64,000 nucleotides of DNA, taken from contig NC_043017.1 in NCBI RefSeq assembly GCF_006345805.1, forward strand, positions 8,680,001-8,744,000, read 5' to 3'. Origin of the DNA: Octopus sinensis (Eukaryota). The notes under the pieces are model-generated. The model searched no databases and had not been told where the DNA came from. It worked only from the letters and a program-made list of their open reading frames with translations. Numbering within the stretch: the stretch's first letter is position 1; the number at the start of each line of letters is the position of its first letter. The position numbers were made by a program, and so were the translations under genes. This document shows, in pieces, positions 14,831 to 63,696 of this stretch.

Positions 14831-15880
14831 CTGTATCCTTCTCCTTCCTCCCCTCATTCTCCTTCCCCTTCCCTCTCTATCTCCATTCAACTTTCTCCTT
14901 CATCTCTCTCTATCCATCTCCTTTCTCTTTCTCCTTTTCTCTCTTTTCTCTTTCTCTCATCCAGCACTCTCAACTGTATCCTCTCTTTCTTTCTCTCTTT
15001 CTCTCTCTTCCTCCAAATACCAAATACATCCATATATAGATATACAAATATATAAATATATGAATATACAAAATATATAAATATATACATATATCTATGT
15101 TCTACTTTTTTCAGGTGTGAACTCTTGGAAACTATAAAGAAGTAAAAAAAAGTAAGAAGAAAAGGAAAAGAAAATACTTAGAGGCATTGGGAAGACCCTA
15201 CTCCCACCACAACCACCACCACTACCTCCACCAACAACACCAACACCACCACTACATTACCACCTCCACCACCATCACCACCACTATTGCATGGTATCTT
15301 TTTGGTCCATCATGAATTCTACGTCTCGTTATGGTGAATGATGTAATTGTTCTTACTCGAATGAAGATGAAACTAAAAATTAGTCAGGAACCAGAAATGG
15401 TTCCCAGATGTGATGCGTATAGAGGTTTGGTGTGTGAGGAATATCGTTAACTGATTGAAGAGAGTGGTCTGCCTAAAAATTATCCATATCGGCAAGTTAA
15501 ATAATTAAGAACAAACTCAGCAGCTACAACTACAACAACAACAACAACAACAACAACAAAAACAACAACAACAGCAGCAGCAGCAATTATAATGTTTTCT
15601 TTATTTGCCACAAGGGGAACGTATGAAGAACAAAGACAATGCACAAAAGCGGTCAGAGTTTTACATTGTGTGTTGGCATAAAAAAAAATTGCTACATAAC
15701 AAATAGAAAAGATATAAATGGAATATATGCAAAACATAAATACCATATTTTCTTATGTATAAGTCACACTCGTGCATAAGTCACACTTATATATAAGTTG
15801 CACTCATGTATAAGTCACACCCCAGTTTTTTCAGTTAAAACCAAGTAGAAAATAGTGTGACATATATACGAGTAAAAAAG

Positions 15881-15923
<43 letters not shown>

Positions 15924-16174
15924 TGCGTGTGTGTGTGTGCATGTGCGTATGTATCTGTGTGTATATGTGTGTGTGCACATGACTGTGATCCAAAGGATGA
16001 GGATGGACACACTAGTGCAATTAAGGGCTTGCCAAAAATCATCAGCGTTCCCTTTGGCATTAAGGCAAGTGGCTTCTCCATGCTGTGATGATTCTGTAAA
16101 TGAAAACTGAAAGTAGATCTAACCAGCCATACTGAGACACTCATACACACGTACATACATACACTCACCAACCT

Positions 16175-16208
<34 letters not shown>

Positions 16209-16213
16209 TAATA

Positions 16214-17410
16214 ATGTTCGTTTCACACGATATTGTTTCAGCTTTGTCTGTTTTGCTTCTTCTTGTCATTCATGTTGCTGGGGCACGTGTTTCTGTGACA
16301 AATGACACAAGCTTAAGGTTACATAAACCTTCATTCCGTCGCCAGCCCCAGCCTCTCCAATATGGCACACCAGGTGAGAAGATGAAGTTTGTATGTAAAG
16401 TCAGAGGTCACTCCAAGTTAAGCATGTCCTGGTTCAAAAATTCACAGATTCTGAAGCAAACGGCAGACACTAACAATAATAGTTCCCGAATTAAAGTTTC
16501 ACGGAATACTTTAGTAATGAACCCTTATAAAGCAGAGGATTCTGGGAATTATTCTTGCAGAACAGAAACAAAAAATGGTCATAAACTGAGATCAGATTTC
16601 CGGGTTCTCACCAAAAATCTTTCTCAGGCAGAGTCCATAAAAACTGACCAAATGCACAATGAAAGCATTGAAGGGGAAAGCGAAGGTAAACCTCCATTTT
16701 GGGTTCGTAAAGACAGATCTGATCTATACTTTCCTGCAGGATCACAGTTAAAACTCCGCTGCTACGCTGATGGAAATCCTGTTCCGAAAGTGATATGGAA
16801 GAAAGGGAATCGTATCAAATGGGAAGGTCAAACGATGATAATGAAAAAATTGGCCCCTAAACATGAAGGGGAGTATCAGTGTATTGCTGAAAATAAACAT
16901 GGTCGAATTACTCATCGATACAATCTACATGTAATCAGAGTAAGCAAGCAGGCACCACCTGTAGTTAAAGGCATCACTAACCAAACCGTAGCTGAAGGTA
17001 GTGTTGCCAGGTTCAAATGTGTTGTGAGTAGCGTATCATCGCCTTATATCGAGTGGTTGAAAGTATCTTCGGTGAACACAACAGGAAGCACAAATATAAA
17101 ACAGGAACTGTTTATTGAGAAAAACCAGGCGACTGGGTTATACGTGGTCTGGTTTGTCATACAAAATGTCACAGCATCAGACACGGGCCGATACATCTGC
17201 CAGGCATCAAACGCATCTGGTAGAGCATCAATGAGTGCTTGGCTTGGTCTGTCCAGTGAGACAAATAACGACCCAAATCAACCAATCATGGATGAGTTAG
17301 CAGAAAACTCCCGTTCTTCGGGATACTCAGTGACACAACGGCGGTGTAGAGGTCGTGTCGGGGTAATGTTAGCTGTTGTGATAATGGTTGTCAACTTGGG
17401 CTTACGCTGA
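16214..17410 (+). CDS. Single-exon FGFR-like (FGFRL1/nou-darake-like) 3-Ig protein, 398 aa, no kinase, probable GPI signal
   Basis: Only long non-repetitive plus-strand ORF. Signal peptide MFVSHDIVSALSVLLLLVIHVAGA; three Ig Cys pairs (FVC..DSGNYSC; LRC..HEGEYQC; FKC..DTGRYIC). FGFR D2/D3-like motifs PPFW, PAGSQLKLRC, GNPVPKVIWKKG, ENKHGRITHRYNLHV, NQTVAEGSVARFKCVV, PYIEWLK, SAWL. About nine N-glycosylation sequons. Hydrophobic tail VGVMLAVVIMVVNLGL ends one residue before the stop. Confidence 0.88.
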   Translation: MFVSHDIVSALSVLLLLVIHVAGARVSVTNDTSLRLHKPSFRRQPQPLQYGTPGEKMKFVCKVRGHSKLSMSWFKNSQILKQTADTNNNSSRIKVSRNTLVMNPYKAEDSGNYSCRTETKNGHKLRSDFRVLTKNLSQAESIKTDQMHNESIEGESEGKPPFWVRKDRSDLYFPAGSQLKLRCYADGNPVPKVIWKKGNRIKWEGQTMIMKKLAPKHEGEYQCIAENKHGRITHRYNLHVIRVSKQAPPVVKGITNQTVAEGSVARFKCVVSSVSSPYIEWLKVSSVNTTGSTNIKQELFIEKNQATGLYVVWFVIQNVTASDTGRYICQASNASGRASMSAWLGLSSETNNDPNQPIMDELAENSRSSGYSVTQRRCRGRVGVMLAVVIMVVNLGLR

Positions 17411-17759
17411 ATGATAACACATACATATAATACACAAATACATATATACATATCTACACATATATGCACATACATATACATATACAGATATATACATACA
17501 TATGTATATATTTATATATATATGTATAAACATACACATATATGTATAAACATACACATATATATACATACACTCACATATATATAGACACATATGTATA
17601 TAGATAGATAAATGTGCATATATATATATAAAAATTTAGGTTAGTTGAAATATGTTTGTGACATATTTCAACTGCTAGAAGGCAAATACACAGCGGTTAC
17701 CATGGAGAATATATCTCTCTTAAGGTAACAAGGCATGAAAACCTGGTTATATACATACT

Positions 17760-17799
<40 letters not shown>

Positions 17800-18241
17800 C
17801 ATACATACACATACATACATATACATATATATGCTATATTAGTTTGATACTCGGTGAAAGTTTTAGATGGAAAATTAAAAGTTATTTTTTGACCACGTAG
17901 CAACCCATGTGCTTTTTTCCTGACTGTCCGTTCCTTTCTCTTTTTCCTCTTCCCTGGATTTTCTTTCACTATCCAATGAAGAGCCATGCTCAAAACATCA
18001 TATATGCTATATTGCATATATGCGTGTGTGTGAGTGTGTATGTGTGTGTGTGTAATATATATATCTATATCTATCTATCATCCTCACCATCATCGTTTAA
18101 CGTCTGTTTTCCATGCTAGCATGGGTCGGACGGTTCAACTGGGGTCCGGGGAGCCAGGAGGCTGCACCAGGCTCCAGTCTGATCTGGTAGTGTTTCTACA
18201 GCTGGATGCCCTTCCTAATGCCCACATCTCTCTCTCTCTCT

Positions 18242-18272
<31 letters not shown>

Positions 18273-23703: not shown

Positions 23704-23945
23704 ATCATCATCATCATCATCATCATCATCATCGTTTAATGTCTGCTTTCCATGCTAGTATGGGTTGGACGATTTTGACTGAGGGCTGGTGAACCAGATG
23801 GCTGCACCAGGCTCCAATCTTGATCTGGCAGAGTTTCTACAGCTGGATGCCCTTCCTAACGCCAATCACTCCAAGAGTGTAGTGGGTGCTTTTTATATGC
23901 CACCAGCACGAGGGCCAGTCAGACGGTACTGGCAACGACCTCGCT
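23704..23945 (-). mobile_element. 3' end of RTE-type retroposon with (GAT)n tail
   Basis: Same block (GGCGTTAGGAAGGGCATCCAGCTGTAGAAAC...CCATGCTAGCATGGAAAGC..CATTAAACGATGATG) as the copy attached to RTE coding sequence at 62.1-62.5 kb. Other copies lie near 4.6, 10.6, 18.1, 28.2, 40.8, 56.3 and 61.3 kb. Confidence 0.75.
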
Positions 23946-28126: not shown

Positions 28127-28200
<74 letters not shown>

Positions 28201-28911
28201 ATCATCATCTTCATTTAATGTCTGCTTTCTATGCTGGCATGGGTTGGACAGTTTGACTAAGGACTGGCAAGCCGGGAGGCTGCACCAGGCTCAAATCTGA
28301 TCCGGCAATGCTTCTACAGTCGGATGCCCTTCCTAACGCCAACCACTCCAAGAGTGTAGTGGGTTCTTTGTACATTACCAGTAGAGGAGCCAGTCAGGCA
28401 GAACTGGCATCGACCATACTCGAATGGTGCTTTTTATGTGCCACCGGCACAAGAGCCAGTCAGGCTCTATCTTTCTATCTATCTATTTATCTATCTATCT
28501 ATCTGTCTGTCTGTCTATTTATCTGTCTATATATATATATATATATATATACATACATATATACATATATAAATTAATAGATAGATATATACATACACAT
28601 ACTTATATACATAATACATACATATCTATCAGTCCGTCTCTCTATCTGTATATATGTGTGTACGTGTGCATGTATATATACATACATACATACACACACA
28701 CATATATATATATATATATAATATACACATACATATAAATATATATATATATACATGCACATTTATACATATATATATATATATATATACATACACATAA
28801 ATATGTGTATCTATCTATATACACATATGTGTGTGTGTCTGTGTGTATTTATCTATCTCTCCAACTATCCAATTAGATAACTACTCCTGTAGCTGATTCT
28901 CATTTACTTTC

Positions 28912-29741: not shown

Positions 29742-30020
29742 GACAGCACTACATGATTGGCATCCGTGCTAGTGGAGTGCTAAGAGCACCATCTGAGCGT
29801 GGCAGTTGCCAGTACCGCCTGACTGGCCCTCTTGCTGGTGACACGTAAAAGCACCCACTACACTCTTAGAGTGGTTGGCATTAGAAAGGGCATCCAGCTG
29901 TAGAAACTCTGCTGAAGCAAATTGGAGCCTGGTGCTGCCATCTGGTTCACCAGCCCTCAGTCAAATCGTCCAACCCATGCTAGCATGGAAAGCGGATGTT
30001 AAACGATGATAATGATGATG
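29742..30020 (+). mobile_element. RTE-type retroposon 3' end with (GAT)n tail
   Basis: Full 3' block ending GGATGTTAAACGATGATAATGATGATG. Confidence 0.75.
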
Positions 30021-30679: not shown

Positions 30680-31210
30680 GATGATGGTGATGATAGTGGT
30701 GGTGTTGGTGGTGGTGGCATTGGTTGGTGATGGTGGTGTTATAGCGGTGGTGGTGGTAGTGGAGGTATTGGTGGTGGTGGTGGTATTGGTGATGGTAGTG
30801 GAGGTATTGGTGGTGTGGGTATTGGTGGTGAAGGTGGTATTATAGCAGTGGTGGTGGTATTGGTAGTGGTAGTGATAGTGGTGGTAGTTGAGGTATTGGT
30901 GGTGGAGATAGTGGTGGCGGTATTGGTGGTGGTAGTGATGGTAGTGGAGGTATTGGTGATGAAGATGGTGGTGGTGGTGGTATTGGTGGTGGTAGTGATG
31001 GTAGTGGAGATATTGGTGGTGGAGATGGTGGTGGTGGTGGTATTAGTGGTGATGGTGGTGTTATAGCAGTGGTGGTGGTATTGGTAGTGGTGGTGGTAGT
31101 GGTAGTGGTAGTTGAGGTATTGGTAGTGTAGATGGTGGTGGTGGTGGTGGTGGTGGTATTGGTGCTGCTACAGGTGATGGCAATGATGTTAGTGGTGGTG
31201 CTGGTGTTAA
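30680..31210. repeat. (GGT/AGT/GAT)n low-complexity tract
   Basis: Trinucleotide-derived; source of poly-Val and poly-Pro/Thr ORFs. Confidence 0.9.
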
Positions 31211-31716
31211 TGATGGTGAGCAAAGAGAGGAAGAGAACTAAAGGTGGAGGATGAAGATGATTGTGATGATGATGATGGTGATATGCAGGATGGGGAGGAG
31301 GAGGAGGACAGCAGTAGGCATGGTCTCTCTCGTGGGAGGGGGAGAAATCACTGCAAAAAGCGATGTAGAATACAAAAGAAATCTCAGCAACAAAGAAAAT
31401 TCTAGAAGCATTCTCTACCCCACCCTCCACACACACACCTATACACACTAATAAAAGCAAAAAAAGAAGAAAAAGACACCATACAATTAAAATTGAAAGA
31501 CAAAAGATTATTAAATGTGTGAGACTCTAATTTTGTCTGACTTGACCTTAGCCTTGGAGGTGAAATGCATCAGGAGTTGGTAAACATTAGTTTTTGATAG
31601 ATTAAAAAAGGGAGATAAATTTGAAATGTTTCTGTTTTATTACATCACATCAGCCACACAACGTGCAATATTGCTTGCTGAAAGTATTGCGATTAAAATT
31701 AATACATACATATATG

Positions 31717-40025: not shown

Positions 40026-41814
40026 GATATGTGTGTATGAATGTTTTTCTTTGAGATTTGTTTCAGCTTTTCTTAATGGAAATCAAAACTGGACCAAGCG
40101 ACAAGACTTTTCAAGTTAAAAAGAGTTCCCTGGGTTTGTATGTGGTCGATTTGGTGTGTGCATGTACACATATAAATGTACGTGCCTACATTTATGTTCA
40201 GTGTGAACACGTCCCTCATGTACTTAGGTGTATGTGTCTATGTGTACAGTACTACTTTTTACATATATGCATTTGTAGACACACACAACCAAGTGTGTGC
40301 ATATATTCATTTAAAGCACCCCACTCCACACTGTAAAGCAGTTTGCATTAGGAAAGGCATCCAGTCATAAAAACCATGCCAAGACAGAATCCCCTCACAC
40401 TTTTGGAACATCTTCCCCTATCCCCTCTACAACTTATATTTCCCCACCCCCACTATTCCCTGTGAGTAGGCCTTCTACCTTTCACTATTTCCCATCCTAT
40501 TTAATTGTCTCCCACCTTCCTTTCTTCACTTGTCCTACTCGGGTAGCCAAGTATCTCCTCTACAATAAGACACCTATTTCTGTCCCTCTATCATACTCTG
40601 ACCTCTCGCCTGGCGCACAGTCACTTCTCTCAACTCCAACCCCTCTCTCAGCTGAAAGGTCTTTGTCTCGCAAACTACTAAGTGACCCCACTGGTGCTGA
40701 TACCACTTAAAAGCACCTGTGCCAGTATCACATACAAAGCCACCATGCTGGTGCCACATAAAACACACCTGTGCTAGTGCTACATAAAAAGCACACAGTA
40801 CACGCTGTAAACTGGTTGGCATTAGCAAAGGCATCCAGCCACAGAAACCTTGCCAAAACAGACAATTGGAGCCTGGTGCAGCTCTTGTCAAACTACCAAC
40901 CTCATGCTAGGATGGAAAATGGACATTAATTGATGATATTGACGATGAATTAATAAAAAATTTATTGATTTAAAAACAATAATTACTTCTTTCTTTTGTG
41001 TCATTACTGCTTTTTATTAAGAAATATTTAAAGAAATTTAATGAAAACACTTAATGAAATTGATAAAAAATAACAAAAATTCAATCACATTAAACTGCAA
41101 ACTTCTTATATCATTGACCCTCTTCACGGAATTGTTGATAACTTATTGACCCCCATCATGTAAATTTCTAAAATAAAATTAAAGAGTATAATTAATAGAA
41201 AATGTCTTGATTTCAAAACAAGAATTTCTTCATTCTTTTGTGTCATTATCGCTCTTTGATAGAAATATTTAAAGAAATTCAATGAAAACACTTAACGAAA
41301 TTGATAAAGAACAATACAAAATTCAGTCATATTATATTGATAAAGTCTGAATATTTAATGTGAAATATGTGTGTGATGAATACTAGTTATTACATTGATA
41401 TTTGACTGTAAATTAGAGTAAATTCAAAATTGTCAGACAACTAAAACCACTCTATTGTAAATAGACTATAAATACACACTAATATTGAGCGTCTCTATTA
41501 CAATGTCTTCATAAAAAGTGTACACTTCTTAATTAGTTTGCCAATCAGCCAGTTGGCATTGCATGTTTACTAGGTGCATGCCAATGGTGTGATATCTGCT
41601 AAGGAATTTTGAGTTTCCTAATTTTAATTCAGATAGATATTTTTAAATGGAATTTTGTTCATCATGAAAAAAAAATACAACAAGCACAAAAAAACCCCCA
41701 CAGTTCACTATTAATTCAGCACCCTTAATGCTCAAATTCATTTCAAATGTTTAGCAACCCCTTTGAAAGCCACATGGATGACCTCCAGGAATCATTGTTG
41801 ACTACTTTACCAAT

Positions 41815-53378: not shown

Positions 53379-54650
53379 TTATATGTAAATAGCATCAGTT
53401 AAGCGTTTCGTGTTTCGGTTGTGTGTATGATGACTGATGGTCTGAATTGGACTGGCGTCTGACCAGTCAGAGTTAGATGATAGGGGTGAGTGAGGAGATG
53501 AACTTGACCACTGACCAGGAGATTCAGGCGACGGCGTTAGGTAGTGGTCTGGTGGGACTGACTGTGTGTGCTGCATGGGGGCTTCCATGCTGACGTGACT
53601 GTGCTGTGAAGGAGGGGTGGGGTACTGTTCAGGGGCGATTGGATGTGGGGCGGCCACTTTTTGACAATGGGGTGAATCCGAGTGATAGAGCAAACCAATG
53701 CTGTCTCCACCATTTCCTCCGCCACCACCAAATGTGCAACTCTCGTGCTGTGCTGCCCTGTTCATTTGTGCATGTTGTTGCATCGCCTGCAGGTGTGTCG
53801 GTGATGTTGGCAGGTTCTTCGGTTTTACAGGTGATGGCACATTGCATGCAATTGGTGCAGGGCCTGTTTGCTGAGGGACTACCTGCACCAGGTGAGGGGG
53901 CATTTGTTGTGGAGGCACTTTCTGTGGTGGTTGTAGCTGTGGTGGTGGTGGAGGTTGTTGCTGTTGTTGCTGCTGCTGCTGTTGTGGTGGCAGTGGCGGT
54001 GGTCCCTGCTTAGTCACCTGCGCAGATTTGAACCAGTTGGGTGACATGTCGTAACTGTGGTTAGGTTTGGCATAATGTGCACGCATAACTGCTCTTTCTA
54101 GATAAACAGGATCCCGCTCTGTGTCCATATTGGCGGTCATCACCAACTGACCTTGACAAGCACCCTGGTCAAACTGAGACATTACATCAACAACCCCACC
54201 AGGGGAAGAGTGCATATTCGGTGGCGATTTAGTCGTAACCAACATCTCGGTGTTTGTGCCGCCGTTCATGGTTGTTGCTTCAGGCGTTTTCTTCTTGCGG
54301 GAGCGAGGTTTTTGTGCTGCTACACTGTTTGGCTTTGTAGACTGGACATCTTTGCACTGAGGATTGTTCTTGGTTGATTTACGTGGACGCTGTTTCTGTT
54401 TCGATGATTGCACAAAGTTCATCGATGGTGGGGAAGGGGCAATGTTGTTTGATACTTGCATCGTCGGCGAAGTATTCAACATGTACTCTTCGAGCAAAGT
54501 AACTATGTCGTGGTGCAACTTCTCGGCAGCCATGTCCTTTGGTAGTCTATCCATGTGATCTGTAATATCTCGGTTGGCATGGTATTCCAAGAGTACTTTG
54601 GCAGTTTCGTAGCCTCCTTCTCGGGCAGCGAGGAACAGTGGAGTTTCATC
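53379..54650 (-). CDS. Notch: Notch terminal exon: end of ANK domain, NLS, polyQ/P, PEST, stop
   Basis: Acceptor TTTTCAG|[15 protein letters not shown]...[13 protein letters not shown]; KPRSRKKK; [14 protein letters not shown]; YPTPPSQHS and [28 protein letters not shown]/phosphodegron. 1272 nt including TAG. Confidence 0.97.
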
Positions 54651-55938: not shown

Positions 55939-56457
55939 CTGAAAAGATGACAAATGAATACATAAATAGCATGGAACATGGATGTTGAATGATGATGGAG
56001 GACATCCAATTGTAAAAAGCTCAAAACATAAAAAGGCAGACAAAATGCCACTAAGCATTTTGCCCAGCATGCTAACAATTCTTCCAGCTTGCCACCTTGA
56101 GAGAAAGCCATATATTGAGGGCCTGTCCTCTGCAGGGAGCCAGAAGGCAAAATGTAGGGTCACATGCTTTGTCACAAAGTCAAATGTTCTGGTATTTGAA
56201 GGAATAGGTTTAACAGCCCATTTGCCAGCCTCGTCTGGCACGTAAAAAGCACCCACTACACTCATGGAGTGGTTGGCGTTAGGAAGGGCATCCAGCCGTA
56301 GAAACATTGCCAGATCAGACTGGGCCTGGTGCAGCCTTCTGGCTTCCCAGACCCCAGTTGCACCGTCCAACCCATGCCAGCATGGAAAGCGGACGCTAAA
56401 TGATGATGATGATCATCATCATCATTTATAGTATATACTAAGTAAAATGTCTCTTAC

Positions 56458-61130: not shown

Positions 61131-62099
61131 CTGGAGGAGGAGGAGAAAGTAGAGAATGCAAAAAAGAAGGAAAATAAATATTGATGTTAATTAATTAATA
61201 AAAATGTTATCTTCTGACAGAAAATTTTGCATTGAAAATACTTAGAAATATTCCATGCAGGCATGCATCTATAGAGATGTATTCACACCCATACTAATGT
61301 CATCATCATCAGTGTCATCGTTTAACATCCGCTTTCCATGCTGGCATGGGTTGGATGGTTTGACTGAGCGCTGGCGAGCCAGAGTCTGCACCAGGCTCCA
61401 ATCTGATCTGGCAATGTTTCTACAGCTGGATGCCCTTCCTAACGCCAACCACTCCAAGAGTGTAGTGTGGGTGTTTTTTTACATGCCACCGTCATGGGGC
61501 CAGTCAGCTGGCACTGGCACCGACCATGCTCAAATGGTGCTTTTTATGTGCCACCAGCACAGTCCTTATATTACATGTGCAGTGCGTGTTCATATGTATA
61601 AATAACCATAATAAGAAGTTTGCTTCCCCTGGTCTCAGGTTTAGTCCTACTGTGTAGCACCTTGGGCAAGTGTCTTCTACTACAGCCTTGAGCTGATCAA
61701 AGCTTTTTGAGAGGCTGGGAGGGTAGAAATGGAAAGATCTCTGCCATATACAAACATGCGTGTGTGTCTTCTGGTCTTGACATGACATAGTAGTGTAAAT
61801 GAGCATCACTGTCATACAAGCAGTGTTGTTCATTTTCAAAATTCTGTGAAAAATGTGTCTGGCAATAGGGAAGTATTACCTTGTTTGGAAATAGGTGAGG
61901 GTTGGTAACAAGAAGGGCATCTAGCTGCAGAAAATAGGACTCAATAAACTCATGCAAACATGGGAAAATGATTCCTAGGTGTAAGGGGCCAGTTTGAAAA
62001 GAAACAAGTAAAATATTTGGGCCAGATATGGCTGGCTTAAATGCTAATGGGTTAAAAGAAGATTAGTAGTTTTGGGGCCTTTCAGTCAGTCAGAAGTGT

Positions 62100-62485
62100 A
62101 GACAAAAGAAAAAAAGCAATAACTCTGACCATTTCAATGGGAGTTGGGTAAACCCAGGAAGACGTAGGACAAAATGGTAAGAAAGGATCTTTGGACACTG
62201 GTCTTCACTGAGGAAATGACAAGGGAACAGGAGACTCGCCAAGTTAAGTAAAATCGCTGTCATTCATACATTTGGGTTTGTGCTTTGCAGGTGCCAGTGC
62301 TACATAAAATTCACTTGTGCTGGTGACATGTAAAGAGCAGCCAGCACACCCTGGAAAGTGGTTGGCATTAGGAAGGGTATCCAACTATAGAAACCATGCT
62401 ACAACAGACAATTGGAGCATGGTCAGCTCCATGTCAATCTAACCCATGCCAGCATGGAAAATGGATGTTAAAAAATGATGATGTT
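62100..62485 (+). mobile_element. RTE LINE 3' end (ORF C-terminus + 3' UTR + (GAT)n tail), antisense in a Notch intron
   Basis: GKPRKT*DKMVRKDLWTLVFTEEMT resembles the RTE GRPRKTW motif and is followed by the abundant GGCATTAGGAAGGG...CCATGCCAGCATGGAAAATGGATGTTAA block. Confidence 0.7.
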
Positions 62486-62521
62486 GATAATTATTTTTCA
62501 TAGAAAGACTGTTTTACTTAC

Positions 62522-63096
62522 CCTCTAACAACTGCAGCCCTACGTGAAAGCCGATGTTCTGTGCGTAGCAGTTGAGTAATGTAACGTTTCACTAAGTTCA
62601 CCTTGTTATCTGCCTCCTCATCTTGGTACCATGGATAAATCATATAATTCCCATCCTCGCCACGCTTGAGTCGGACCACAGTTTGTAAGAGTGCACCAAG
62701 TTGCCAGATGAATTGGGTGGCACTCTTCCGAAATGTCTCTGGAGGCACAAGAACGATGAGTACCAACGTTCCGACAGCTAAACTTTCTTTGTTCTTATCG
62801 CAGTCCAGACCATCCCAAAGACATTCTTCATTATCACAGCCTTTATCGCACATGCCATTTCCATAGTTTTCTGAGCAGTATGCTTTATAGACAGGGTTGC
62901 AAGCAGCTTGTTTGTCTTTGCAGTCAAATCCATCCCACAGACAATCTTCATTGTTACATTCAGGGTCACATTTGTTGTCTTGGAAAACGTCCCAACAGAA
63001 CCGGCCGTTCGACTGCTTCTTACAGTTCTTGAAAGGGAAGGTTCCTTTGGAACATTCCATGTTGTCATACTTACAAGCATGGGAATTGCATTCAGC
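62522..63096 (-). CDS. Notch: Notch LNR repeats + HD-N exon including the S1 loop
   Basis: Acceptor TTGAAG|GCT, donor GG|GTAAGT; 575 nt; LNR motifs CNSHACKYDNMEC, CNNEDCLWDGFDC, CDNEECLWDGLDC; GTLVLIVLVPPE; MIYPWY. Confidence 0.96.
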
Positions 63097-63696
63097 CTTC
63101 AATTGTGTGGAAAAAATATATAAAGAAAAGAAATAAAATCAATATTGAAATACAAATACATATTCACATTATACACATGCATAAATAACAGTGCCTATAT
63201 AAAATGGTATTAAGGTGGCAAGATAGTAGAATCGTTACCACACCAGGTGAAATGCAAGTACCAGTTGAATACTGGGGCCAATGTAATTCACTTAGATTGC
63301 TGGCCTTGCACTAAAATTTGAAACCAATATAAAATGGTATTTTAACACATTGCACCTTGTGGTTATCTGTACCAGTCTTTTCAATTCTGATGGGAACGCC
63401 TGCGACAACTCTGGTACCAAACTGTAATACTGGTCTTTAAGAAAGGCCTTTCCCTTTGAGAGAACTAGGGAAGGCTTTAATGCATGGGCAACTGCTAGTT
63501 TCAATGTAACAAAGGGAATTGAGAGAACAGTACTAGGTACTCAGGGCACTAGGTGGGAAAAAAAAAACCTTGCCAAGTCTTCAATTACAGGTGCAAATAC
63601 ATTGTCAACACTGACTGATGCAAGCCACTCTGACTGTGGAGGTGTGTTTTCACACATGAACACATGCATAGATAGATATCGATATTTGTGTGTGTT

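What the first reader, a model, noticed from the sequence alone, without database searches (positions are those of the whole stretch)
16214..17410. Intronless, kinase-less, probably GPI-anchored FGFR-like receptor: candidate FGF decoy or co-receptor
Seen in sequence: an intact 398-aa ORF in repeat-saturated DNA, a signal peptide, three Ig domains (the last two with FGFR D2/D3-like motifs), an acidic linker (NESIEGESEG), about nine sequons, small residues (NSRSSG), a basic spacer, then a 16-aa hydrophobic stretch ending one residue before the stop. Established: FGFR and FGFRL1/nou-darake proteins have a TM segment plus a cytoplasmic part and, as far as I recall, introns between Ig domains; planarian nou-darake restricts brain tissue. 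Inference: a retroposed or intron-lost paralogue that replaced TM+tail with a GPI signal, giving a releasable FGF trap. I cannot tell whether it has been described.
Basis: partly seen in the sequence, partly recalled or inferred. Interest (0 to 1): 0.75.

Follow-up and report, generated by a model that had tools for sequence, protein, structure and literature searches.

The report
Kinase-less, GPI-type FGFR-like octopus gene
This octopus gene encodes only the outer, three-domain half of an FGF-receptor-like protein, apparently held on the cell surface by a lipid anchor. It is real, expressed and conserved in octopuses and cuttlefish, and it is machine-annotated but unstudied; whether it still binds FGF is doubtful.

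Summary
Window 16214-17410 (+) is an intact 398-aa ORF with a signal peptide, three Ig domains, 10 sequons and a 16-residue uncharged C-terminal stretch followed by one Arg and the stop. The gene is real. dN/dS is 0.10-0.20 among octopods, an 86% orthologue comes from an octopus meta-transcriptome, and cuttlefish orthologues occur as spliced mRNA contigs.

FGFR kinship holds. In a per-envelope HMM test against about 3000 Ig envelopes, FGFR3, FGFR1 and FGFRL1 rank first for D3, D2-D3 and D1-D3. Three D3 sequons sit at FGFR1 N264, N296 and N330. There is no TM-plus-tail or kinase in the ORF, the transcripts or the 64-kb window.

The GPI-type tail is kept in all five family sequences, but this rests on a home-made rule, not a validated predictor. 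"Intronless" holds only for the coding sequence; cuttlefish mRNAs have a 5'UTR intron.

The FGF-trap idea is weakly supported. The FGFR1 contact residues I recall are mostly changed (R250 to Val in all five; A167, D282, Q284), and D2 has a 12-residue deletion. A conserved basic D2 remains.

RefSeq names the O. bimaculoides orthologue "FGFR3-like". I found no paper on it. It is a new variant of a known kind and moderately interesting.

The parts
15866..16213 (+). Transcribed 5' leader, at least this much. It is collinear with an octopus meta-transcriptome contig. A candidate acceptor (ttttttcag) lies at about 15827-15835 but is untested.
   Evidence: L002 (SRR3401912, RNA) aligns to window 15943-17424, and its first 21 nt match about 15866-15890 across the microsatellite. 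The acceptor was read by eye.
16214..17410 (+). Complete coding sequence, 398 codons plus TGA, in a single exon
   Evidence: The exact protein is on record from two NCBI chromosome assemblies. dN/dS is 0.10-0.20.
16214..16285 (+). Signal peptide (aa 1-24; hydrophobic core 10-22; cleavage most likely after VAGA)
   Evidence: Kyte-Doolittle windows of 1.7-2.8. AlphaFold2 models helix 4-26. An equivalent hydrophobic N-terminus is present in all five family members. No SignalP run.
16331..16618 (+). Ig domain D1 (aa 40-135; C61-C115). Generic I-set, not specifically like FGFR D1.
   Evidence: Pfam. In the per-envelope test FGFRs rank only 29-98 for D1. dN/dS is 0.11-0.17.
16619..16693 (+). D1-D2 linker (aa 136-160) at the position of the FGFR acid box. 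It is mildly acidic in octopods (NESIEGESEG), poorly conserved and predicted disordered.
   Evidence: Alignment to FGFR1, FGFR3 and FGFRL1. pLDDT is below 50 for residues 136-156. dN/dS is 0.21-0.41.
16694..16942 (+). Ig domain D2 (aa 161-243; C183-C223). It has the FGFR-type start PPFWVRK and a net charge of +10. Relative to FGFR it has a 3-residue and a 12-residue deletion.
   Evidence: dN/dS is 0.07-0.09. pLDDT is 80-94.
16943..17251 (+). Ig domain D3 (aa 244-346; C269-C329). It carries FGFR-type motifs: NQTV...FKC.V....PYIEWLK and YIC.A.N..G....SAWL. Sequons N256, N288 and N318 sit at the columns of FGFR1 N264, N296 and N330.
   Evidence: The D3 envelope scores 53.6 and 53.4 bits for FGFR3 and FGFR1, against 40.0 for the best non-FGFR domain.
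17252..17356 (+). Stalk (aa 347-381) with a conserved small-residue cluster that could hold the GPI omega site (S366, S368 invariant; candidates S368, G370, S372 at 17315-17329). A basic spacer QRRCRGR follows in octopods only.
   Evidence: pLDDT is below 50 for residues 350-384.
17357..17410 (+). C-terminal uncharged hydrophobic run VGVMLAVVIMVVNLGL (aa 382-397), then R398 and the TGA stop. This is the hydrophobic part of a GPI-attachment-type signal.
   Evidence: All five family members end 0-1 residues after a 16-18 residue uncharged run. The ad hoc rule passes 11/11 family sequences, 32/42 contactins and 0/27 TM or other Ig proteins.
16176..16215 (.). (ATA)n microsatellite running directly into the start codon
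   Evidence: sequence.
17417..17632 (.). TA/CA-rich microsatellite array starting 7 nt after the stop codon, inside the presumed 3'UTR
   Evidence: sequence.

Best explanation
This is a real, expressed gene found so far only in coleoid cephalopods (octopuses and cuttlefish-type decapodiforms). Its whole coding sequence sits in one exon. It encodes a secretory-pathway, heavily N-glycosylated protein made only of an FGFR-family ectodomain (D1, linker, D2, D3), with no transmembrane-plus-cytoplasmic part and no kinase.

The C-terminus has the design of a GPI-attachment signal: a conserved cluster of small residues, a spacer, and a 16-18 residue uncharged tail that ends at the stop codon.

Inferred mechanism: the signal peptide is removed, the tail is exchanged for a GPI anchor in the ER, and the three-Ig ectodomain sits on the outer leaflet of the plasma membrane. 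From there it could also be released by lipases. Having no signalling part of its own, it would act by binding. Through its conserved, strongly basic D2 and its highly constrained D2-D3 unit it would engage heparan sulfate and either an FGF-type ligand or a signalling FGFR. It would thereby tune FGF signalling, most likely dampening it, as a decoy or co-receptor.

Shown here: the ORF, the domain make-up, FGFR-family kinship, absence of a kinase, purifying selection, transcription, the single coding exon, and conservation of the tail design.

Inferred only: GPI anchoring, heparan sulfate binding, FGF or FGFR binding, and the direction of the effect.
For: ORF and features. Three Ig domains.

FGFR kinship:
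- FGFR3 ectodomain is the top PDB hit, at 104.7 bits for the single sequence and 138.9 bits for the family profile. FGFR1 aligns collinearly over all three domains.
- BLASTP gives 114 bits against human FGFR1, whose sequence I verified as 100% identical to 8jqi_B.
- In the per-envelope HMM test against about 3000 Ig envelopes from 225 Ig-rich proteins, the D2-D3 scores are FGFR3 113.9, FGFR1 106.0, a fish FGFR 97/93 and FGFRL1 86.7, against 70.3 for the best non-FGFR. For D3 the scores are 53.6 and 53.4 against 40.0.
- The D3 motif C.V....P.I[EQ]W[LS][KR] occurs in 4 of about 3900 other Ig domains. SAWL occurs only in the FGFR among 225 non-family proteins.
- Sequons at FGFR1 N264, N296 and N330 are kept in all five members.

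No kinase: no kinase motifs in six frames. tblastn with full FGFR1 hits only the ectodomain ORF.

Functional gene: dN/dS is 0.097-0.197 among octopods and 0.195 between the two decapodiforms, and lowest in D2 and D3.

Expression: L002 comes from an octopus meta-transcriptome. Cuttlefish contigs are spliced to upstream exons. One run is from Acanthosepion esculentum.

Tail design is conserved in five sequences down to 39-43% identity, with S366 and S368 invariant.

D2 has a net charge of +10 to +13. K/R is kept at FGFR1 K160, K175, K177 and R209.
Against: - No validated GPI predictor (NetGPI, PredGPI, big-PI) or SignalP could be run. My tail rule is ad hoc, and I loosened one threshold after seeing the first result.
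- The octopod spacer is unusually basic (four Arg in six residues).
- The FGF-contact residues of FGFR1, as I recall them from the Plotnikov/Mohammadi structures, are mostly not kept. R250 in the D2-D3 linker is Val in all five. A167 is Tyr. D282 is V/V/V/D/H. Q284 is S/A. V316 is N/H/K.
- D2 lacks 12 residues that include FGFR1 K207, and it lacks the KKL of the heparin-binding stretch.
- D1 is not FGFR-specific.
- The acid box is weak and not conserved.
- Whole-chain PDB scores for Robo, DSCAM and titin come close to FGFR. Fold search does not single out FGFR.
- There are no tissue expression data and no binding data.
Confidence: 0.55

Rival explanations
1. The protein has FGFR ancestry but now works as a GPI-linked three-Ig cell-recognition or adhesion molecule, in the manner of IgLONs (OPCML, NEGR1, IgLON5) or insect DIPs and Lachesin. 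It would bind itself or another surface protein rather than FGF.
For: - The architecture (signal peptide, three Ig domains, GPI-type tail, many sequons) is that of IgLONs as I know them.
- IgLON and DIP three-Ig structures are among the top fold matches.
- Most canonical FGF-contact residues are changed and D2 is shortened.
- An 'amalgam' protein is the best non-family hit of the word-indexed searches.
- FGFRL1 itself is reported to induce cell adhesion (title and abstract of PMC4899019).
Against: - By sequence, IgLONs are far weaker matches than FGFR. NEGR1 scores 66 bits against 139 for FGFR3.
- Amalgam's D2-D3 envelope scores 40 bits against 106-114 for FGFR.
- The conserved basic D2 and the FGFR-type D3 motifs suggest that at least part of the ancestral binding surface is retained.
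Confidence: 0.28
2. It is the cephalopod orthologue of FGFRL1/nou-darake. It would have lost its introns and its cytoplasmic tail, and the C-terminal hydrophobic run would be the remnant of the FGFRL1 transmembrane helix.
For: - It has the same kinase-less three-Ig layout.
- Its domain spacing is almost the same as that of Lottia FGFRL1: SP 1-31, Ig 48-113, Ig 167-231, Ig 262-349, TM 381-403 (PMC2754479).
- BLASTP scores against human FGFRL1 (96-112 bits) are close to those against FGFR1 (108-115 bits).
Against: - Per-envelope HMM scores favour FGFR over FGFRL1: D3 53 against 34 bits, and D2-D3 106-114 against 87 bits.
- All three conserved D3 sequon columns are shared with FGFR1 and FGFR3, but only one with FGFRL1.
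- FGFRL1 keeps the linker Arg and this family does not.
- FGFRL1 genes, including Lottia's, are multi-exon.
- The human FGFRL1 sequence I used was written from memory and could not be verified.
- No molluscan FGFR or FGFRL1 could be retrieved for a tree.
Confidence: 0.1
3. The C-terminal hydrophobic run is not a GPI signal. The protein would then be either a type I membrane protein with essentially no cytoplasmic tail, or be fully secreted.
For: - No validated predictor was run.
- AlphaFold2 models residues 375-397 as a helix.
- The octopod spacer is very basic, which is atypical for GPI signals (my own knowledge).
Against: - The uncharged run is only 16-18 residues and ends 0-1 residues before the stop in all five sequences.
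- The basic residues lie on the luminal side of the run, which goes against the positive-inside rule for a type I anchor (established knowledge).
- A small-residue cluster 26-32 residues from the C-terminus is conserved.
- The tail evolves faster than the Ig domains while keeping its composition, as signal sequences do.
- It passes the same rule as 32/42 contactins and 0/27 TM or other Ig proteins.
Confidence: 0.12
4. It is a chance ORF or a dead retro-copy with no function.
For: It lies in microsatellite-rich DNA, has a single coding exon, and no study of it exists.
Against: - The chance probability of such an ORF is about 1e-13 per start.
- dN/dS is 0.10-0.20, with dS of 0.3-1.1.
- The reading frame and stop position are kept between octopods and decapodiforms.
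- RNA-derived and spliced contigs exist.
Confidence: 0.01

Closest known systems
Canonical FGF receptors (vertebrate FGFR1-4; invertebrate FGFRs)
   Same: It has a three-Ig ectodomain that aligns collinearly with D1, linker, D2 and D3. FGFRs are its best sequence relatives for D3 and for D2-D3. It shares the D2 start motif P(F/Y)W, the D3 motifs P.I(E/Q)WLK and SAWL, and three D3 N-glycosylation positions. D2 is basic.
   Different: It has no transmembrane helix with a cytoplasmic part and no tyrosine kinase. It ends in a GPI-type signal. The acid box is weak. D2 is shortened by 12+3 residues. The linker Arg (FGFR1 R250) and several other FGF-contact residues are replaced. The coding sequence is in a single exon.
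FGFRL1 (FGFR5) / planarian nou-darake
   Same: It is a kinase-less member of the FGFR family with three Ig domains and very similar domain spacing. The decoy/modulator idea comes from this precedent.
   Different: FGFRL1 has a transmembrane helix and a roughly 100-residue cytoplasmic tail, a multi-exon gene with one Ig domain per exon (PMC2754479), and keeps the linker Arg. This family scores lower against FGFRL1 than against FGFR in D3, and it appears limited to coleoid cephalopods, whereas FGFRL1 is pan-metazoan.
IgLON family / insect DIPs, Lachesin, Amalgam (three-Ig, mostly GPI-linked recognition molecules)
   Same: The overall architecture is the same: signal peptide, three Ig domains, GPI-type tail and many sequons. 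They are among the top fold matches.
   Different: Sequence similarity is much weaker than to FGFR (66 against 139 bits in the PDB profile search). The family lacks nothing that would exclude a similar mode of action, but it is not a member by sequence.
Soluble or truncated receptor decoys in general (secreted FGFR splice forms, sFlt-1) and GPI-anchored tail-less versions of transmembrane families (T-cadherin, NCAM-120). This comparison is from my own knowledge.
   Same: In each case a binding ectodomain is kept and the signalling part is removed. Here, as in T-cadherin and NCAM-120, a GPI signal takes its place.
   Different: The splice forms (secreted FGFR, sFlt-1, NCAM-120) come from the parent gene, and T-cadherin belongs to another family. 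This is a separate FGFR-family gene, conserved across octopods and decapodiforms.

Membership tests
FGFR family (ectodomain level) | The closest sequence relatives of the D2-D3 unit are FGFRs, in collinear order | tested here: met
   Per-envelope D2-D3 scores are FGFR3 113.9, FGFR1 106.0, fish FGFR 97/93 and FGFRL1 86.7 bits, against 70.3 for the best of about 3000 other Ig envelopes. The PDB profile search puts FGFR3 first, and FGFR1 aligns 45-358 to profile positions 67-362.
FGFR family (ectodomain level) | D3 signature motifs (P.IQWLK after the first Cys; SAWL at the end) and D3 glycosylation positions | tested here: met
   The family has PYIEWLK or P(Y/F)IEWSR, and (S/R)AWL. The motifs are rare in about 3900 other Ig domains. 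Sequons align with FGFR1 N264, N296 and N330 in all five members.
FGFR family (ectodomain level) | Acid box between D1 and D2 | tested here: inconclusive
   A short, mildly acidic stretch (NESIEGESEG) sits at the right place in octopods. It is not conserved in the decapodiform members.
FGFR family (ectodomain level) | Conserved FGF-contact residues (FGFR1 A167, P169, V248, R250, D282, Q284, V316, N345; list from my memory of the FGF2-FGFR1 structures) | tested here: not met
   Only P169, V248 (as Ile) and N345 are kept. R250 is Val in all five. A167 is Tyr. D282 is V/V/V/D/H. Q284 is S/A. V316 is N/H/K.
FGFR family (ectodomain level) | Basic heparin-binding surface on D2 | tested here: inconclusive
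   D2 has a net charge of +10 to +13. K/R is kept at FGFR1 K160, K175, K177 and R209. K163, K164 and K207 are deleted and K172 is lost. No binding assay was possible.
Canonical FGFR (receptor tyrosine kinase) | Single transmembrane helix followed by a cytoplasmic split tyrosine kinase domain | tested here: not met
   The ORF stops one residue after the hydrophobic run. There are no kinase motifs in six frames of the 64-kb window. tblastn with full-length FGFR1 finds only the ectodomain. Transcript contigs read through the stop codon.
FGFRL1 / nou-darake | Three Ig domains plus a transmembrane helix plus a non-kinase cytoplasmic tail | tested here: not met
   Three Ig domains are present, but no residues follow the hydrophobic run apart from 0-1. 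FGFRL1 features are taken from PMC2754479.
FGFRL1 / nou-darake | Multi-exon gene with Ig domains in separate exons and phase-1 introns | tested here: not met
   The whole coding sequence is contiguous in genomic DNA in octopus. It is collinear between intron-bearing and spliced contigs in cuttlefish. FGFRL1 gene structure is from PMC2754479.
FGFRL1 / nou-darake | Groups with FGFRL1 rather than FGFR in a phylogeny | not tested
   No lophotrochozoan FGFR or FGFRL1 sequences could be retrieved. As a proxy, HMM envelope scores favour FGFR over human FGFRL1, but that FGFRL1 sequence came from memory and is unverified (one search found no PDB entry).
GPI-anchored proteins | N-terminal signal peptide | tested here: met
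   There is a hydrophobic core at residues 10-22 with small residues at -3 and -1 (VAGA|R). The feature is conserved in all family members. This is by inspection only; no SignalP run.
GPI-anchored proteins | C-terminal signal: small omega, omega+2 residues, a spacer, then a hydrophobic tail that ends the protein | tested here: inconclusive
   Omega candidates lie 26-32 residues from the end, with S366 and S368 invariant. An uncharged run of 16-18 residues ends 0-1 residues before the stop in all five. The ad hoc rule passes 11/11 family sequences, 32/42 contactins and 0/27 TM or other proteins. No validated predictor was available.
GPI-anchored proteins | Release by PI-specific phospholipase, or chemical proof of the anchor | not testable with these tools
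   This needs an experiment.
IgLON / DIP-type three-Ig GPI-linked adhesion molecules | Sequence membership (closest relatives are IgLONs or DIPs) | tested here: not met
   NEGR1 scores 66 bits and other IgLONs less, against 139 for FGFR3. The amalgam D2-D3 envelope scores 40 bits. Only the architecture and fold match.
Retrogene (retroposed copy of a multi-exon parent) | Intron-free copy of a parent mRNA, with a poly(A) remnant or target-site duplications and an identifiable parent | tested here: inconclusive
   The coding sequence is intron-free, but a 5'UTR intron exists in cuttlefish. No poly(A) trace is recognisable in the microsatellite-rich flank. The parent gene was not available. The single coding exon is shared by octopods and decapodiforms, so the event, if any, predates their split.

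The most novel reading that the evidence does not exclude
Coleoid cephalopods independently invented a lipid-anchored, kinase-less FGFR. It would be a lineage-specific offshoot of the canonical FGFR, possibly a retrogene, that replaced the transmembrane helix and kinase with a GPI signal. It has been kept under strong purifying selection since before octopods and decapodiforms split. It would act as a releasable modulator of FGF/heparan-sulfate signalling with an altered ligand-binding mode, in parallel with the pan-metazoan FGFRL1/nou-darake.
Probability: 0.3. Interest if true: 0.6.

Novelty: new variant of a known kind. Interest (0 to 1): 0.42.

Why it matters
Kinase-less relatives of FGF receptors (FGFRL1, planarian nou-darake) shape tissues by limiting or redirecting FGF signals. 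All the ones I know of are transmembrane proteins from multi-exon genes.

This gene would be a second, structurally different solution: a lipid-anchored one, encoded in one coding exon and found only in coleoid cephalopods. These animals have unusual brains, arms and regeneration, and FGF signalling in them is hardly studied.

The gene is short, has a single coding exon and has clear orthologues. That makes it easy to express, to test for PI-PLC release and for heparin, FGF or FGFR binding, and to localise by in situ hybridisation.

If it no longer binds FGF, it is instead an example of a growth-factor receptor ectodomain being re-used as a surface recognition molecule.

Tried and rejected
1. 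The exhaustive profile search of 1.84 billion representatives was swamped by giant multi-Ig proteins whose scores add up over many domains. Only P0001 and P0003 were family members in the visible top 150. Weaker orthologues (below 182 bits) outside cephalopods cannot be excluded.

2. I tried to pull in molluscan FGFRs by adding a chimeric row to the query alignment (octopus ectodomain plus human FGFR1 kinase). It failed: no FGFR was scored, and contactins and VEGFR1 came up instead. It did reveal one more family member, P0166.

3. The third word-indexed search, with the five-member profile, found no further members. No FGFR/FGFRL1 phylogeny with lophotrochozoan sequences was therefore possible.

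4. The AlphaFold2 model (mean pLDDT 63.5, with good D2 and D3) and a Foldseek search against the PDB did not discriminate. Any three-Ig chain matches. FGFR2 came 48th, although with the highest sequence identity (28%).

5. Whole-chain PDB scores for single-domain profiles are inflated for multi-Ig chains. I replaced them with a per-envelope test.

6. A search for kinase or transmembrane exons downstream found none. A search for paralogues in the window found none.

7. Looking up run accessions in papers identified only SRR3401912 (octopus meta-transcriptome) and ERR12945500 (Acanthosepion esculentum). The species behind P0001, P0002 and P0166 remain unnamed.

8. My first version of the GPI rule (at most 4 residues after the best 12-residue window) failed the octopod sequences and many contactins. 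I loosened it to at most 6 residues after seeing this, so it is a soft control only.

9. Literature searches for a described cephalopod FGFR-like, GPI-anchored FGFR or nou-darake homologue found nothing relevant. I also found no open paper stating the role of the FGFR linker Arg, so that point rests on my memory.
Full report
**1. Is it there?**

Yes. The ORF at 16214..17410 (+) is 398 codons from ATG to TGA. The only other long non-repetitive ORFs in the window are exons of a Notch gene far downstream on the other strand.

The window is AT-rich, with GC of 0.28-0.43. Stop codons should then make up about 7% of random codons, so an open run of 398 codons has a chance probability near 3e-13 (my calculation).

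Direct reading shows:
- a hydrophobic N-terminus (core 10-22, VAGA|R);
- six Cys in three Ig-type pairs (61/115, 183/223, 269/329);
- ten N-x-S/T matches, which is nine sites;
- NESIEGESEG at 149-158 and NSRSSG at 365-370;
- the basic stretch QRRCRGR;
- an uncharged run VGVMLAVVIMVVNLGL (382-397), then R398 and the stop.

Pfam finds three Ig/I-set domains. Microsatellites crowd both flanks: (ATA)n runs into the ATG, and a TA/CA array starts 7 nt after the stop. None lies inside the ORF.

**2. Where is it from, and is it already annotated?**

The window is 100% identical to GCA_006345805.1, chromosome CM016879.1. The identical protein is encoded in GCA_951406725.2, OX597834.1. From memory, these are the Octopus sinensis and O. 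vulgaris assemblies.

The exact 398-aa protein is on record from NCBI, so gene callers already take this single ORF as the coding sequence. Its 90% cluster holds the O. bimaculoides orthologue, which RefSeq names "fibroblast growth factor receptor 3-like" (XP_014776481.1 plus XP_052831456-8, four accessions for one protein). I found no paper that mentions the gene.

**3. Is the gene alive?**

Three searches of the 5.8-billion-protein collection found only four 90% clusters of relatives:
- P0001: 93% identical; the cluster that also holds the window's own protein and the O. bimaculoides orthologue.
- P0002: 86% identical; another octopus.
- P0003: 43% identical.
- P0166: 39-43% identical to the octopus protein and 66% identical to P0003.

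Nei-Gojobori dN/dS is 0.097, 0.197 and 0.179 among the octopod sequences (dS 0.32-0.49), and 0.195 between the two distant members (dS 1.1). By region it is lowest in D2 (0.07-0.09) and D3 (0.02-0.21). It is highest in the signal peptide, linker, stalk and tail. This is the pattern expected of a working secreted-pathway protein whose two signal sequences are constrained only in composition.

**4. Is it transcribed, and how is the gene built?**

Contig L002 (P0002) comes from run SRR3401912, which a virome paper describes as the meta-transcriptome of an octopus (PMC11662614). It is collinear with the window from about 15866 to 17424. That span covers about 350 nt of leader, the whole ORF, the tail and the stop.

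The P0003 cluster is carried on more than 100 contigs of 2-4 kb from many runs. One of these runs, ERR12945500, is Acanthosepion esculentum (golden cuttlefish) short reads that were used for chromosome depth analysis (PMC13218726).

These contigs fall into classes that are identical from a point 435 nt upstream of the ATG onward and differ before it:
- One class has ...ttttttcttttttcttttcAG at that point, a textbook polypyrimidine-AG acceptor. The A. esculentum read set gives this form.
- A second class has one upstream exon, ending ...CAATAAG.
- One contig has a different upstream exon.

So these are spliced mRNAs alongside intron-bearing DNA or pre-mRNA. The gene has at least one 5'UTR intron with alternative first exons. 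The 435-nt leader, the whole coding sequence and at least 1.5 kb of 3'UTR form one terminal exon. None of the contigs compared splices out before the tail.

"Intronless" is therefore right for the coding sequence and wrong for the gene. Octopods and decapodiforms share the single coding exon, so whatever produced it is old. Retroposition is a reasonable inference, because FGFRL1 genes, including that of the limpet Lottia, are multi-exon (PMC2754479). There is no poly(A) trace and the parent gene is not in hand, so it stays an inference.

**5. Is it FGFR-like or just another Ig protein?**

This needed care, because whole-chain scores flatter multi-Ig proteins. In the PDB searches the FGFR3 ectodomain is first: 104.7 bits with the single sequence and 138.9 bits with the family profile. 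FGFR1 aligns collinearly over all three domains. But titin, Robo2 and DSCAM come close, and single-domain profiles give mixed rankings.

I therefore scored individual alignment envelopes. I used family profiles for D1, D2, D3, D2-D3 and D1-D3. The targets were 225 Ig-rich proteins that the large searches had returned as the best matches (about 3000 envelopes), plus human FGFR1, the FGFR3 ectodomain and human FGFRL1. My recalled FGFR1 sequence proved 100% identical to PDB 8jqi_B. The FGFRL1 sequence is from memory and unverified.

Results:

| Profile | FGFR-family scores (bits) | Best non-FGFR (bits) |
|---|---|---|
| D2-D3 | FGFR3 113.9; FGFR1 106.0; fish FGFR model 97.3/92.7; FGFRL1 86.7 | 70.3 |
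| D3 | FGFR3 53.6; FGFR1 53.4; fish FGFR 48.4 | 40.0 |
| D1-D3 | FGFR3 133.5; FGFR1 124.1; FGFRL1 103.6; fish FGFR 98.4 | 80.6 |

An insect Robo (sax-3-like) and contactins reach only 35-48 bits for D2-D3. D2 alone ranks FGFR3 third, and D1 is not FGFR-specific.

The alignment shows the FGFR-type start of D2 (PPFWVRK against APYWT.PE). It shows the D3 string NQTV..G....FKC.V....PYIEWLK against N(K/Q)T...G..VEF.CKVYSD.QPHIQWLK, and the end YIC.A.N..G....SAWL against YTCLAGNSIG.SHHSAWL.

The D3 motif occurs in 4 of about 3900 other Ig domains. SAWL occurs only in the one FGFR among the 225. Three D3 sequons sit in the same alignment columns as FGFR1 N264, N296 and N330 in all five family members. 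FGFRL1 shares only the first.

I conclude that the ectodomain belongs to the FGFR family. On present evidence it is nearer to canonical FGFRs than to FGFRL1. A proper tree with lophotrochozoan sequences could not be built.

**6. What is missing?**

There is no cytoplasmic part and no kinase. The protein ends one residue after the hydrophobic run. Six-frame translation of the whole window holds no tyrosine-kinase motif. tblastn with full-length FGFR1 hits only the ectodomain ORF, with 46 kb of sequence downstream searched. The mRNA contigs carry the stop codon and the 3'UTR.

**7. The C-terminus**

All five sequences, down to 39-43% identity, end 0-1 residues after an uncharged run of 16-18 residues. 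A spacer precedes the run, and before that lies a cluster of small residues in which S366 and S368 are invariant. Candidate omega/omega+2 pairs lie 26-32 residues from the end.

This is the textbook layout of a GPI-attachment signal. The run is short for a membrane span. In octopods the basic residues lie on the luminal side of it, which is the wrong side for a type I anchor.

As a soft control I applied a home-made rule: hydrophobic 12-residue window of at least 1.8, at most 6 residues from the end, at most 2 charges in the last 15, and a small omega/omega+2 pair. It passes 11/11 family sequences, 32/42 proteins that their sources name contactin (a GPI-anchored family), and 0/27 named transmembrane, kinase or other Ig proteins. 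No validated predictor was available.

**8. Would it bind FGF?**

I mapped the FGFR1 residues that, as I recall from the FGF2-FGFR1 and FGF-FGFR2 crystal structures, make the primary contacts. Only P169, V248 (as Ile) and N345 are kept. The D2-D3 linker Arg (R250) is Val in all five. A167 is Tyr in all five. D282 is V/V/V/D/H, Q284 is S/A and V316 is N/H/K.

D2 also lacks 12 residues (the stretch of FGFR1 that contains K207) and the KKL of the heparin-binding stretch.

On the other side, D2 is strongly basic in every member (net +10 to +13). K/R is kept at FGFR1 K160, K175, K177 and R209. D2 and D3 are also the most constrained parts of the protein.

A conserved binding function is therefore very likely and heparan sulfate binding is plausible. 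A canonical FGF-binding mode is doubtful.

**9. Best reading and rivals**

The best reading is a lipid-anchored, kinase-less offshoot of the FGFR family that acts by binding on the cell surface, or after release. Its most likely role is as a modulator of FGF/heparan-sulfate signalling (confidence 0.55 for the whole statement). Of its parts, FGFR kinship, absence of a kinase and a live, expressed gene are close to certain. The GPI anchor is about 0.75 and FGF or FGFR binding about 0.4.

The main rival (0.28) is that the ectodomain has been re-used as an IgLON/DIP-like recognition molecule. That fits the architecture, the fold matches and the changed FGF contacts.

A truncated FGFRL1 orthologue (0.1) is disfavoured by the D3 scores, the sequon pattern and the lost linker Arg. 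It is not excluded.

**10. Novelty**

The gene model exists in RefSeq under a best-hit name that wrongly suggests a receptor kinase. Nothing about its architecture, anchor or restricted distribution appears in the literature I could search.

Kinase-less FGFR relatives are known (FGFRL1, nou-darake), and so are GPI-anchored tail-less versions of other receptor families. This is therefore a new variant of a known kind: moderately surprising and easy to test.

Noticed in passing
window 53379-54590 (-) and 62518-63102 (-): A Notch gene lies on the minus strand, convergent with the FGFR-like gene. Its 3' end is about 36 kb downstream. The 62518-63102 ORF has LNR and NOD domains (Pfam E-values 1.5e-26 and 4e-19). 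The 53379-54590 ORF reads like the ANK-distal, polyQ/PEST-type C-terminal exon and has no Pfam hit.
   Followed up: partly
window 18080-18245, 23719-23863, 28198-28343, 29868-30019, 56272-56412, 61315-61449 (plus fragments at 40815-40882 and 62361-62483): An interspersed repeat of about 145 bp (SINE-like) is present in at least six copies at 80-88% identity on both strands. One copy lies 670 bp downstream of the ORF's stop. It explains the recurring 'LDALPNA' pseudo-ORFs.
   Followed up: partly
window 17339-17356 (aa 376-381) and the orthologues: The spacer before the hydrophobic tail is very basic in octopods only (RRCRGR, RQRCKGH, RWRKDR). RRCR fits a minimal proprotein-convertase motif. The decapodiform members have nothing like it. 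If the anchor is GPI, this stretch is removed with the propeptide. If not, it could be a shedding site.
   Followed up: no
L006 position 663 (cuttlefish orthologue); L010-L013, L016, L019: The cuttlefish gene uses at least two alternative upstream 5'UTR exons, both spliced to the same acceptor 435 nt before the ATG. One of them is at least 947 nt of upstream transcript sequence.
   Followed up: partly
P0104 (738 aa, returned): This fish FGFR-like protein model has the D2-D3 unit repeated (two full copies plus a third D3) and no kinase. It is probably a mis-assembled or mis-predicted gene model. I used it only as an FGFR comparator.
   Followed up: no
window 30840-31460 (-): A 206-aa ORF made almost wholly of Pro/Ser/Thr/His runs has no Pfam hit. 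It looks like translated low-complexity DNA rather than a gene.
   Followed up: partly
window 15526-15573 and 16176-16215: Trinucleotide arrays (ACA)n and (ATA)n lie in the presumed 5' leader, and the second touches the start codon. Length changes there could alter the leader but not the reading frame.
   Followed up: no
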